Program-made: the position numbers and the translations under genes
Source: Podarcis filfolensis
Taxonomy: Eukaryota
DNA length: 64,000 nt
Assembly (NCBI GenBank): GCA_964270895.1
Contig: OZ185453.1
Reading direction: 5' to 3' (one strand)
Part shown: positions 26,885 through 29,900 of the stretch, in pieces
Numbering within the stretch: the stretch's first letter is position 1
Layout of the letters: each line of letters opens with the position of its first letter
Notes under the pieces: generated by a model
What the model saw: only the letters and a program-made list of their open reading frames with translations
Databases searched by the model: none
What the model was told of the DNA's origin: nothing

Positions 26885-26900
26885 ATGAGCGGCAAGAAAG
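26885..26900 (+). CDS. SRPK3: SRPK3 putative exon 1 (16-nt coding micro-exon MSGKK)
   Basis: gccATGAGCGGCAAGAAAG|gtaaag; good Kozak; phase 1 like SRPK1 MERK-V and SRPK2 MSSRK-V. Confidence 0.6.
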
Positions 26901-29900
26901 GTAAAGAGGGGGCGCGCGGCTGCCCTTCAAGGCTGGGGGGCGCGTGCATGGGGGCTGCAGATAAATCCTGGGTGGGGGAGGCAGTTGCATGGGGAGAAAA
27001 GAGGGGGCGGCGGAGGCAGGTGCAGAGGGGGCGGCGGCGGCGGCAGGGGGGCTTTCCTCTTGCACGGTCGGTCCCTGCTGCTGCTGCTGCTGCTGCTGCC
27101 ATTTGCAAGCTTGCCTAGGAAACTTTTGCAGGCGGAGCGCTCATTCTCCTCCCTCGCATCCCTCAGGCCCGGGGAACGGCCGCGGCAAAAAGAAGAAGCA
27201 CAAGAAGGAGAAGGCGCCCCCGGCTCCGCAGGCAGAGAGCGAGACCCCCACGGGGTGAGTGGGGCGCCCAGTGCATCTTACCTCGGGGGGAGGGCGGCGG
27301 CAGGAGCGACCCTGCCCCGTCGGAGCTGAATGCGGGCGAGAGGTCCTGCTTCTGGAAACTGCAGCTCTCGGGTGGGGGGGGGGTCCTCCCCGTTTAGAGG
27401 AAGCCGGCATGACTTGGGGGGGCAGGTTTGCGGAACAGGTGCTGGGGAAGCCGCAAGGGGGAGTGCGGGGCTGGCTGCGCCTTCTCAGGGCAGATTCACA
27501 CGTGCATGTTCGGAATCGTGGCTTGAGTGGACGGGCCAACACGGGTATCAATGCCTAAAGCGCCCCGCTTTTCGGGGGAGCCCGTGCAGGCTCTCCGCTG
27601 CCAGCCTTCAGGCTGCAAGAACGCCAGTGGCACCTGTGCACGTGTAAGCGACTTTTAGTGTTTGGAGGGTGGAAATTTCAGGAAATCGGTCAGTTTCATA
27701 ACACGCCTTTGTCTCTGGAAGATTGCATAGTTTGCATGTGTGAATGTCCATCACAGGTATAACGCTATATATAATCTTAAATGTAATTAAGTGGAGGCAG
27801 TTTGACTGCAAGTAATTTGGGTGTTGAGAAGACCAAATCATGGTTATGATTTCCATTTCTCTGGCAAGGGGGAAAAATGATGATAAAGCTTCTGCTACAA
27901 CTTAAAACACAGGAGCGCTTCTACATTGCTGCATTGACATGTAAAGCAGTCAGGAGAGCTGGTCTAGAAAGTAATTCAGCTTTCTGATGATGAAGGCTCA
28001 ACCCCCAGTCTTCAAGGCAAAACCTGAGTAGGAGTGGCTGTGTTTGCTCACTTGAGGACCTTTACCTCTTCAACAATGAATTTTATTGTGAGCTTCCGGG
28101 AGTAAGGAGCTTCGGTTTTTGCTCGTTGTTGTTGCCTAGACAAAAGCCTGTGCCATGATAAGTGTGTTAGGCTTTTAAGAGGCCTCAGTTCATAAACGTG
28201 GATTGGGTGCCTTTTGCAACAGGATGGCTGTGACAGACTAATAAGTCCAGATGACTCGAACAAGTGAACCAAGCTGGATCCCTCAATATGTTGTTGGGCT
28301 TCTACTTCCATCATTCCTTGGGGCTGATGGGAGTTACGAGTCCAACAACATCTGGAGGGCACCAGGAGAGGGAAGGCTCCCCTGAGATAAGGTAATTCCT
28401 GCCATCATCTGAAATTATTATTATTATTACTATTATTTTATGTATATCCTGCCTTTTTCCCAAACCGGGACGCAAAGTGAGTTACGGATAAAATAGAAAC
28501 AGCTAAAAGACATGGGGAAAACTTATTAAACATTAATAAAAGTAAAACAATTTATAAAACAGATTTATTAAAAATATAGATAGTTACAATAAAAACATCC
28601 CAGCGGTTCCCAAAAGCCTGTTGAAACAAGGAGGTCTTCACCTGGCAGTGCAAGGACAACAAGGAGGGAGCCAGTCTAGCTTCACCAGGTAGGGAATTCC
28701 CAAGTCTGGGAGCAGCCACCACCGAGAAGGCCCTCTCCCATGTCCCCACCAAGCGTGCCTGTGAAATTGAGTTTATTGTCTTCCCTTTTTAAGGGGAGTG
28801 CCACTTAAAAGTGTGACTGCTAAAGGAGTAGTGCTGGTGCTGAGGCCTTTTTAGAGGAATGAGGCTTCCTGGAAGCCCCATCCATGGGGGCTGGAAATGG
28901 TGCTGTAGGTTACTGGGTGGATGTACAATATCTTTTTCTTGGTGCCTTTGGAGAAGGTTGGTTCCGAATCTGAGTCAGATGCAACAAAGGAAAAAAAAAG
29001 GTTGTTTGGTTCTGTGGGGAACCTAGATCATGGGTAGGCAAGCTAAGGCCTGGGCGCCGGATCCGGCCCAATCGCCTTCCAAATCCAGCCCGTGGACGGT
29101 CCAGGAATCAGCGTGTTTTTACATGAGTAGAGTGTGTGCTTTTATTTAAAATGCATCTCTGGGTTATTTGTGGGGCATAGGAATTCATTCATTTTTTCTC
29201 CCAAAATGTAGTCCGGCCCCCCACAAGGTCTGAGGGACAGTGGACCGGCCCCCTGCTGGAAAAGTTTGCTGACCCCAGGCCTAGATCATCTTGCTGTGCT
29301 GATTTAGATTGCAGATGGGATTTACACGATTAAATAAAAAAAAGTATGTCCACATAGGAAACTAGCAAGCTACGGCAAAACTGTGCTAAAACTCCCCTCC
29401 CATTCTAGGGAGCTTTTAGTTTCTTTTCCATGGGAGAGCAGCCAGCCTTGAGAGAGAGCATCTGCCGCGGTTTGGTCTGGACCTGGGGCCTCCTGGTGAG
29501 CTAGGCCCAGGCCATGCAGGGCTGGCCGCTTCCCCTGGCCGGTCTCATCCCGCTTCCCTCGCCCAGATTCCATTCCCATCCTGGGCGGCAGCTGCCGGGG
29601 GCCATGGGGCTATTTTTAACCCCCCGCCCGCCTCTGATGTCTCTGTGCACATTTGGGCTCTGGCGGGGAGGAGGGTTCTGAGCTCACAAGGTATTAATTC
29701 CTCTTTTACTAAGGAGGGGAGCATGTGGACAGATAAGGTGCCCAGCTGCCGGCATGCTTTGCTGAGGCAGTCTTCTGTCTCCATCCCAGGGCCCGTCACT
29801 CCAGCCTGGCTTTCACGCCAGAATCAGCAGCTCCCGCCCAGATCTGGGAACTTTGCTCTGAGGAGTATCTTCTCCCTGGGGAAGGCGTCAGGAACAGAGC

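What the first reader, a model, noticed from the sequence alone, without database searches (positions are those of the whole stretch)
26885..27254. SRPK3 with an SRPK1/SRPK2-like 5' end: 16-nt start micro-exon plus a Lys-rich exon in a CpG island
GCCATGAGCGGCAAGAAAG|GT gives MSGKK with a phase-1 junction, the same design as SRPK2 MSSRK-V (16 nt) and SRPK1 MERK-V. It splices in phase to [19 protein letters not shown]... (phase 1 to 2), which joins the [11 protein letters not shown] exon in frame. Human SRPK3, as I recall it, starts instead with a Gly/Ser-rich muscle exon (MSASTGGGG...). This suggests reptiles keep an ancestral, probably broadly expressed SRPK3 isoform with a basic NLS-like N-terminus that is absent from the canonical mammalian protein.
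Basis: partly seen in the sequence, partly recalled or inferred. Interest (0 to 1): 0.7.

Follow-up and report, generated by a model that had tools for sequence, protein, structure and literature searches.

The report
Upstream basic-N-terminus first exons of SRPK3
The two small exons are real: they start a lizard SRPK3 kinase transcript from a GC-rich upstream promoter and add a lysine-rich N-terminus also found in gecko, bird and salamander SRPK3 gene models, so the finding is sound but already annotated elsewhere.

Summary
Assembled RNA contigs from a closely related species, in two separate studies, join 26900 to 27167 and 27254 to 30471.

The gene is SRPK3. It lies between a plexin gene and an isocitrate dehydrogenase gene, and each exon matches gecko SRPK3 better than SRPK1 or SRPK2.

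The same N-terminus is already in public gene models:
- Sphaerodactylus townsendi SRPK3 (26 of 29 residues identical in exon 2)
- a blackbird SRPK3-like gene
- a salamander model
- vertebrate transcripts of unknown species that start MSSKK

All of these fall in the SRPK3 clade. Cod SRPK1 and blackbird SRPK3-like have the same exon phases (1, then 1 to 2), so the SRPK1-like design is supported.

One correction: an in-frame ATG at 26858 gives [14 protein letters not shown]. It is inside the transcripts and is the start used in the gecko and bird models. The coding part of exon 1 is therefore probably 43 nt, not 16. MSGKK lines up with the older MS-x-KK start.

Broad expression and the nuclear-import (NLS) role were not tested. 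Loss in mammals was tested only weakly.

The scan had already noted the second, internal promoter of this gene.

The parts
26750..27700 (.). GC-rich CpG-island-like promoter region around exons 1a and 2. It contains a CACCC/GC box near 26719-26735, CACGTG at 26779-26784, (TC)13 at 26692-26717 and (CTG)8 at 27075-27099.
   Evidence: GC 0.66 and CpG o/e 0.65 over 951 nt; profile by 200-nt bins; repeats; sequence.
26835..26900 (+). Exon 1a. Its 5' end is only a minimum, taken from where the assembled contigs begin. The donor GT is at 26901-26902.
   Evidence: Joint 26898>27165 with 57 and 64 letters on the short side in X1 and X4.
26858..26860 (+). Upstream in-frame ATG giving [14 protein letters not shown]. 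It is the probable start codon and is conserved as MELTGAGGALSSKK in a gecko and MELRGGP in a blackbird. Its context is weak at -3 (T), with G at +4.
   Evidence: blackbird exon 1 DNA.
26885..26887 (+). It aligns with the MSSKK/MSTKK start of amphibian-type SRPK3, MSSRK of SRPK2-like proteins and MERK of SRPK1. It has G at -3 and could be used by leaky scanning.
   Evidence: in-frame stop upstream of MSSKK in L005/L006.
26901..27166 (+). Intron 1, 266 nt, GT..AG.
   Evidence: Skipped in the X1 and X4 contigs; present in the DNA runs X15 and X17.
27167..27254 (+). Exon 2, 88 nt, phase 1 to 2. It encodes (G)[28 protein letters not shown](G).
   Evidence: Both joints; 26/29 identical to Sphaerodactylus SRPK3; three differences from relatives, two of them synonymous.
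27255..30470 (+). Intron 2, 3216 nt, GT..AG. It holds high-copy repeats and the alternative internal promoter with exon 1b.
   Evidence: Joint 27253>30470 in X1 and X4.
30038..30075 (+). Alternative first exon 1b ([12 protein letters not shown], phase 2), with a MEF2-type site CTATTTTTAA at 29611-29620 upstream. It is the other 5' end of the same gene and was not seen in the X1/X4 contigs.
   Evidence: same N-terminus in Gekko P0026 and Hirundo P0231; present at L003:11122 in the blackbird; earlier finding s1-328092.
30471..30607 (+). Exon 3 ([45 protein letters not shown]). It is shared by both 5' ends and has no in-frame ATG.
31156..31266 (+). Exon 4, the start of the kinase domain ([37 protein letters not shown]).

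Best explanation
These are the first two coding exons of the upstream-promoter isoform of SRPK3.

Shown:
- Transcription starts in a GC-rich, CpG-island-like region at or before about 26835.
- Exon 1a (to 26900) is spliced to the 88-nt exon 2 (27167-27254), and that to exon 3 (30471-30607). Exon 3 carries the conserved [11 protein letters not shown] motif and leads into the kinase domain.
- The exon pair is conserved in SRPK3 of a gecko, a passerine bird and a salamander.
- It has the same phase design (short first coding exon ending in phase 1, then a short basic exon running phase 1 to 2) as cod SRPK1.

Inferred:
- The product has a disordered N-terminal extension with a run of lysines ([12 protein letters not shown]).
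- Translation most likely begins at the ATG at 26858 ([14 protein letters not shown]...). The ATG at 26885 (MSGKK) is a possible second start by leaky scanning, and it marks the position of the older vertebrate start (MSSKK/MSTKK).
- The exon pair is therefore the ancestral SRPK-family 5' end.
- A second, internal first exon (1b, behind a MEF2-type site) gives an alternative N-terminus. Mammals appear to keep only a muscle-type start.
- The basic stretch most likely acts as a nuclear-import or nucleic-acid/partner-binding tail, or tunes catalysis as the N-terminus of SRPK1 is reported to do. None of this was tested.
For: - Spliced contigs with both junctions in two studies, with empty introns.
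- Exon 3 has no in-frame start.
- UniRef 'SRSF protein kinase 3' of Sphaerodactylus townsendi (P0246) maps exon by exon onto the window, including 26858-26899 and 27166-27252 at 26/29 identity.
- Blackbird SRPK3-like P0127 reads MELRGGP-DHVRRRRKRKKDKKPKAPP. Its genomic exons are 22 nt (phase 1) and 58 nt (phase 1 to 2), followed by exon 1b and exon 3 in the same order as here.
- Pleurodeles P0242 (...MSTKKGTGTSAGQGKKSKKKHRRERAKGG) and the Logan transcripts behind P0245 (MSSKKVSGNSQGKKSKKKQRRQKKP, with an in-frame stop upstream) carry the same kind of N-terminus.
- All four group in an SRPK3 clade with support 95/94.
- Cod SRPK1 exons are 13 nt (phase 1) and 55 nt (phase 1 to 2).
- N-terminal alignment.
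- A plexin lies upstream and Iso_dh downstream.
- Literature on the SRPK1 N-terminus reports that it enhances catalysis through ADP release or CK2 phosphorylation, and that SAFB binding to it represses activity (PMC5293202).
Against: - The RNA is from a related organism and is kept only as contigs. Transcript start, abundance, tissue and strand are therefore not shown.
- The index lists no run on record as RNA.
- Homology with SRPK1/2 exon 2 rests on position, phase and basic composition. The VLA[IL]QARKKR motif is missing, and the sequence is low-complexity.
- The teleost SRPK3-like models I saw have other, non-basic N-termini.
- Which ATG is used is unknown. The upstream one has a poor -3 base.
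- No functional data exist for this N-terminus. All solved SRPK structures start after it.
Confidence: 0.85

Rival explanations
1. One reading: translation starts at the ATG at 26885, so the coding part of exon 1 is a 16-nt micro-exon giving MSGKK.
For: This ATG has a purine at -3, while the upstream ATG has T. It aligns with the proven start MSSKK of the P0245 transcripts (in-frame stop upstream) and with MSSRK/MERK of SRPK2/1.
Against: The contigs begin at about 26835-26842 and so include the in-frame ATG at 26858. The gecko has Leu at the second position (ALSSKK) and must start at MEL. The blackbird model also starts MEL. Scanning ribosomes meet 26858 first.
Confidence: 0.3
2. The basic N-terminus of sauropsid and amphibian SRPK3 arose independently of the SRPK1/2 N-terminus. 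It would be a convergent lysine-rich leader, not a retained ancestral exon pair.
For: Exon 2 lacks the VLA[IL]QARKKR motif shared by SRPK1, SRPK2-like and an invertebrate-like sequence. Basic low-complexity runs align easily by chance. A paper states that the SRPK1 N-terminal extension is not conserved among SRPKs (PMC5293202).
Against: The exon order and both intron phases are identical in cod SRPK1, blackbird SRPK3-like and this lizard. The start M-S-x-[KR]-K lies immediately before the phase-1 junction in SRPK3 (MSSKK, MSTKK, MSGKK) and in SRPK2-like proteins (MSSRK).
Confidence: 0.12
3. The exons are a non-coding leader or an assembly artefact, for example read-through from the plexin gene or a chimeric contig.
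For: Only contigs were available, and contigs cannot show true starts. The runs are only guessed to be RNA.
Against: Two studies give the same two canonical GT..AG joints. No loose ends or upstream joints appear at the contig starts. Exon 3 cannot start translation by itself. The exon-2 peptide is 90% identical in a gecko, which is not expected for a non-coding leader.
Confidence: 0.03

Closest known systems
SRPK3 gene models of other non-mammals: Sphaerodactylus townsendi 'SRSF protein kinase 3' (UniRef A0ACB8EMA1_9SAUR, P0246), Agelaius phoeniceus 'SRSF protein kinase 3-like' (P0127), Pleurodeles waltl NDU88_000423 (P0242)
   Same: They have the same N-terminal layout: a short first coding exon, a basic exon, then the [11 protein letters not shown] exon. 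Exon 2 is 26/29 identical to the gecko, the start MEL[TR]G is shared, and the blackbird intron phases are the same.
   Different: The bird's first coding exon is 22 nt, against 43 nt here. The bird gene sits behind an OTU-domain gene, not a plexin. The salamander model is extended far upstream of MSTKK. These are automatic models, and I found no paper that discusses this N-terminus.
SRPK1 5' end (Gadus morhua and Xenopus laevis models, MERK-VLA[LM]QARKKRTK...)
   Same: A micro first coding exon ends in phase 1 right after [KR]K, followed by a short lysine/arginine-rich exon (phase 1 to 2), then the acidic LGSD..EQEDP exon.
   Different: The first coding exon is 13 nt. Exon 2 is 55 nt and opens with VLAMQARKKR, which the lizard lacks. 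It is a different paralogue.
Mammalian SRPK3 (MSSK1/Stk23), a muscle-specific MEF2 target
   Same: The kinase and the [11 protein letters not shown] exon are orthologous. The lizard also has an internal first exon behind a MEF2-type site. The reviews and preprint I read cite Nakagawa 2005 for MEF2 control.
   Different: As I recall it, the mammalian protein starts with a Gly/Ser-rich exon and has no lysine-rich leader. One mammal-like contig (L002) shows no CpG island or basic exon between the plexin and the first SRPK3 exon. I did not check this against an annotated mammalian record.

Membership tests
SRPK3 orthologue group | Kinase exons are closer to SRPK3 than to SRPK1 or SRPK2. | tested here: met
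   Exon by exon, tblastn identity to gecko SRPK3 P0246 is 84-97%, against 64-92% for an SRPK2 fragment and 64-86% for Xenopus SRPK1. Relatives with the same N-terminus fall in an SRPK3 clade with support 95/94. The window's own exons were not joined for a tree.
SRPK3 orthologue group | Gene neighbourhood of plexin-B3, then SRPK3, then IDH3G (as at human Xq28, from memory). | tested here: met
   Plexin_cytopl and Plexin_RBD exons lie on the + strand at 11.6-15.9 kb, and an Iso_dh exon lies on the - strand at 58.8-59.0 kb. Which plexin or IDH paralogue these are was not tested.
SRPK-type 5' exon set (as in SRPK1) | The first coding exon ends in phase 1 directly after a [KR]K dipeptide. | tested here: met
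   ...AAG AAA G|GT at 26900. Cod SRPK1 has AGA AAA G|GT. The blackbird junction is also phase 1.
SRPK-type 5' exon set (as in SRPK1) | The second exon is short, lysine/arginine-rich and runs phase 1 to 2, followed by the LGSD(D/E)EQEDP exon. | tested here: met
   The exon is 88 nt here, 58 nt in the blackbird and 55 nt in cod SRPK1, all running phase 1 to 2.
SRPK-type 5' exon set (as in SRPK1) | Exon 2 opens with the VLA[IL]QARKKR motif. | tested here: not met
   The lizard, gecko, bird and amphibian SRPK3 sequences have G/V-x-G...GKK(S)KKK instead.
SRPK-type 5' exon set (as in SRPK2) | A 16-nt MSSRK first coding exon in SRPK2. | tested here: inconclusive
   The MSSRK protein start is seen in P0125. 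In the SRPK2-like locus L008 the first 27 residues lie more than 10 kb upstream, outside the fetched DNA.
CpG island (Gardiner-Garden and Frommer criteria) | GC at least 0.5, CpG observed/expected at least 0.6, length at least 200 nt. | tested here: met
   26750-27700 has GC 0.66 and o/e 0.65. Methylation state is not testable here.
Classical monopartite nuclear localisation signal | A K-[KR]-x-[KR] core in an exposed basic run, and importin-dependent nuclear import. | not testable with these tools
   The pattern is present (KKKKHKKEK). Import was not tested, and no solved SRPK structure covers this region.

The most novel reading that the evidence does not exclude
SRPK3 began as an ordinary two-promoter SRPK gene. 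It had an SRPK1/2-type CpG-island promoter giving a basic N-terminus, plus an internal MEF2-driven muscle promoter. Amphibians, lizards and birds keep both. Mammals lost the upstream promoter and its two exons, and that loss is what made mammalian SRPK3 a muscle-restricted kinase without the basic leader.
Probability: 0.4. Interest if true: 0.45.

Novelty: already known. Interest (0 to 1): 0.3.

Why it matters
SRPK3 is studied almost only in mammals, where it is a muscle kinase under MEF2 control and is linked to myopathy and intellectual disability. If non-mammalian SRPK3 also runs from a housekeeping-type promoter and carries an SRPK1/2-like basic N-terminus, two things follow. First, the mammalian muscle restriction would be a derived state caused by promoter loss. 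Second, zebrafish, frog or chick models of SRPK3 disease may express an isoform that mammals lack. For genome annotation the practical point is small: this lizard's SRPK3 has two first exons, and the coding start of the upstream one is probably at 26858.

Tried and rejected
- The run index lists no RNA holder. The twelve small 'RNA?' runs hold only 4-5% of the words. I considered that they might be RAD or low-pass DNA, but laying two of them showed spliced contigs with empty introns, so they are RNA.
- The big representative search with the SRPK3-specific spacer exon (window:43756-44031) returned only two genomic-ORF fragments from related lizards and one unrelated protein. This was a poor use of the single job.
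- The word search with the exon-4 ORF found mostly exon-sized genomic ORFs, many of them mammal-like. It was useful only for the Gekko fragment.
- The Gekko scaffold L001 has only 2 kb upstream of exon 1b and shows no exon 2, so it is uninformative.
- No locus is on record for the Sphaerodactylus protein, so gecko intron phases could not be checked.
- The SRPK2 micro-exon was not found within 10 kb in L008.
- Full-length annotated squamate SRPK3 proteins could not be reached. The joined model was never sent to a search tool. The only joining was a frame check printed inside a script.
- An R-rich window in L002 at 9561-9620 lies in a GC-rich stretch (GC 0.70) about 170-220 nt upstream of MLQGLLGS. 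I took it to be another frame of the mammalian Gly/Ser-rich first exon, from memory of the human sequence, and did not check the other frames. I did not count it as a remnant.
- Primate-derived hits (P0142, P0238) and P0027, which looks primate- or human-like, were not fetched or analysed further. I took L002 for a non-human mammal because its exon-4 peptide differs from human SRPK3 as I recall it.
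Full report
**What is in the sequence**

ATG is at 26885 and ATGAGCGGCAAGAAAG ends at 26900 before GTAAAG. An acceptor AG lies at 27165-27166. An 88-nt exon (27167-27254) reads (G)[28 protein letters not shown](G) and is followed by GTGAGT. A further acceptor lies at 30469-30470, before an exon that reads [45 protein letters not shown].

The frame of that third exon is closed by a stop at 30427-30429 and has no ATG, so it must receive its start from upstream. The stretch 26750-27700 has GC 0.66 and CpG observed/expected 0.65. 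It also holds a (TC)13 and a (CTG)8 microsatellite.

**RNA evidence**

The run index reported no holder on record as RNA. It listed twelve small runs of 'organism A' guessed to be RNA, two DNA runs that hold nearly all words (probably the source species), and DNA runs of two relatives. I laid 26450-30700 on two of the guessed RNA runs from different studies (X1, X4) and on two relatives' DNA runs.

X1 and X4 each contain one contig with exactly two joints. One is 26898>27165 (GT..AG, cut +2, so 26900|27167). The other is 27253>30470 (GT..AG, cut +1, so 27254|30471). Depth in both introns is zero outside interspersed repeats, while the DNA runs cover everything.

From the record coordinates the contigs begin at about 26842 and 26835. 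The X1 contig (1311 nt) runs on about 1 kb into later exons. Against the window, organism A differs in the coding exons at four places:
- 27176 A>G, which changes Asn to Ser
- 27201 C>T, synonymous
- 27219 C>T, synonymous
- 30526 C>T, synonymous

No contig covered the alternative exon 1b in these two runs. Contigs show neither starts nor levels nor tissue, and they come from a close relative.

**Which gene it is**

Plexin cytoplasmic-domain exons lie upstream on the same strand, and an isocitrate dehydrogenase exon lies downstream on the other strand. This is the neighbourhood I recall for human SRPK3.

A gecko protein named SRSF protein kinase 3 (Sphaerodactylus townsendi, P0246) maps exon by exon on the window at 84-97% identity. 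An SRPK2 fragment maps at 64-92% and Xenopus SRPK1 at 64-86%.

**Relatives with the same N-terminus**

Exon-sized queries cannot reach full-length proteins in the word search. I therefore worked outward from fragments.
- P0246 (gecko) starts [45 protein letters not shown]. The window reads [14 protein letters not shown] at 26858-26899, and exon 2 is 26/29 identical.
- A blackbird model (P0127, SRSF protein kinase 3-like) starts MELRGGP-DHVRRRRKRKKDKKPKAPP. In its DNA (L003) the first coding exon is ATGGAGCTGCGCGGGGGGCCCG|gtgagg (22 nt, phase 1) and the basic exon is 58 nt (phase 1 to 2). An exon MGETPEGTR (the 1b type) follows, then the LGSDEGEQEDP exon. This is the same order as in the lizard.
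- A salamander model (P0242) contains ...MSTKKGTGTSAGQGKKSKKKHRRERAKGG... before the [11 protein letters not shown] exon.
- Three transcript contigs from an unidentified vertebrate (L004-L006, P0245) start MSSKKVSGNSQGKKSKKKQRRQKKP. Two of them have an in-frame stop upstream and no ATG between, so MSSKK is the real start there.
- In a tree of the first 125 kinase-domain residues these four fall in one SRPK3 clade (95/94) together with Gekko, Polypterus and teleost SRPK3-like fragments. SRPK1 forms a separate starred clade (97/92), and the SRPK2 rows fall outside the SRPK3 clade but are only partly resolved.

**Comparison with SRPK1 and SRPK2**

In cod SRPK1 (L007) the first coding exon is ATGGAGAGAAAAG|gtgaag (13 nt, phase 1). 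The next exon is 55 nt (phase 1 to 2) and encodes VLAMQARKKRTKPKKPSKK. The third exon carries LGSDEEEQEDP. The lizard has the same three-exon plan with the same phases.

The alignment puts MSGKK under MSSKK, MSTKK, MSSRK and MERK. It also shows that SRPK3 lacks the VLA[IL]QARKKR opening of exon 2.

I could not check the SRPK2 micro-exon, because it lies beyond the DNA fetched for L008.

**The start codon**

An in-frame ATG at 26858 lies inside both RNA contigs. It is the only possible start in the gecko protein (Leu replaces the second Met) and is the start of the bird model. No in-frame ATG lies further upstream in the open frame.

The upstream ATG has T at -3 and G at +4. The second has G at -3 and A at +4. 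I conclude that 26858 is the likely main start in saurians, giving 43 nt of coding sequence in exon 1a. 26885 is a possible secondary start and marks the position of the older start. This does not change the junctions or the basic exon.

**Mammals**

I have only indirect evidence. As I recall it, human SRPK3 starts with a Gly/Ser-rich exon.

One Logan contig that I take for a non-human mammal (L002) has plexin exons and an SRPK3 exon reading MLQGLLGS.... Between the last plexin ORF and that exon it has CpG o/e of 0.04-0.29 and no basic exon in any forward frame. The one exception is an R-rich alternate frame in the GC-rich stretch just upstream of that exon.

The literature I could search treats mammalian Srpk3 as a MEF2 target expressed mainly in muscle. 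I found no paper that mentions a basic N-terminal isoform.

**Function**

Nothing was tested. The lysine run fits the pattern of a classical nuclear-import signal.

For SRPK1, a paper summarises three findings on the N-terminal extension (PMC5293202):
- It is dispensable for basal activity.
- It can speed catalysis through ADP release or CK2 phosphorylation.
- It is where SAFB1/2 are presumed to bind.

All solved SRPK structures begin after this region, and no SRPK3 structure is in the PDB copy.

**Verdict**

The same N-terminus already stands in public gene models of other species, so this is not a new kind of thing. The evolutionary reading (an ancestral promoter and leader kept outside mammals) is plausible and, as far as I could search, not written up.

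The scan had already noted the internal MEF2 promoter of this gene (s1-328092). My data agree with it and add that both 5' ends coexist in the blackbird genome.

The joined exon model was not sent to any search tool.

Noticed in passing
window 29589-30075: Alternative first exon 1b (ATG at 30038, [12 protein letters not shown], phase 2) lies behind a MEF2-type site CTATTTTTAA at 29611-29620. The same N-terminus is annotated in Gekko japonicus (P0026) and Hirundo rustica (P0231), and is present in the blackbird genome at L003:11122. It was not assembled in the two RNA runs laid here.
   Followed up: partly
window 28296-28440, 28580-28860, 29006-29290: Interspersed repeats in intron 2 have summed contig depth of thousands to millions in the DNA runs and about 35,000-42,000 in the RNA runs. 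They show many goes-back and skip joints and poly-A/poly-T loose ends near 29193-29203, so they look like SINE-type elements that are also transcribed.
   Followed up: no
window 26159-26431 and 36908-37033: ORF translations share the string QCFPTLGLQLFLDYNSHHP / [19 protein letters not shown]. This is another dispersed repeat, present just upstream of the promoter island and in a later SRPK3 intron.
   Followed up: no
L003 (Agelaius phoeniceus CM119747.1) 1-24296: The bird SRPK3-like gene lies directly downstream of an OTU-domain gene, not a plexin. A crested ibis model (P0233) even fuses OTUD5 with the SRPK3 exons. The blackbird model stops at 209 aa by reading into an intron, and the flank is full of proline-rich tandem-like sequence. 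Synteny differs from the lizard, and the bird models look unreliable.
   Followed up: partly
L004-L006 (Logan transcripts SRR19440676/79/83): The SRPK3-type transcript that starts MSSKK is split into two ORFs (282 aa ending ...PPPSGSAEWKGI, then 309 aa with the second kinase lobe) in all three runs. This could be a retained intron or an isoform that breaks the frame at the start of the spacer.
   Followed up: no
window 26692-26717 and 27075-27099: Perfect (TC)13 lies just upstream of the promoter island, and perfect (CTG)8 lies inside intron 1. Read laying reports reads cut at both, so they may vary in length among relatives.
   Followed up: no
window 27176: All three relatives (organisms A, C and D) read G where the window has A. 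Asn in GPGNGRG is therefore Ser in the relatives, and the window's state may be the derived one.
   Followed up: no
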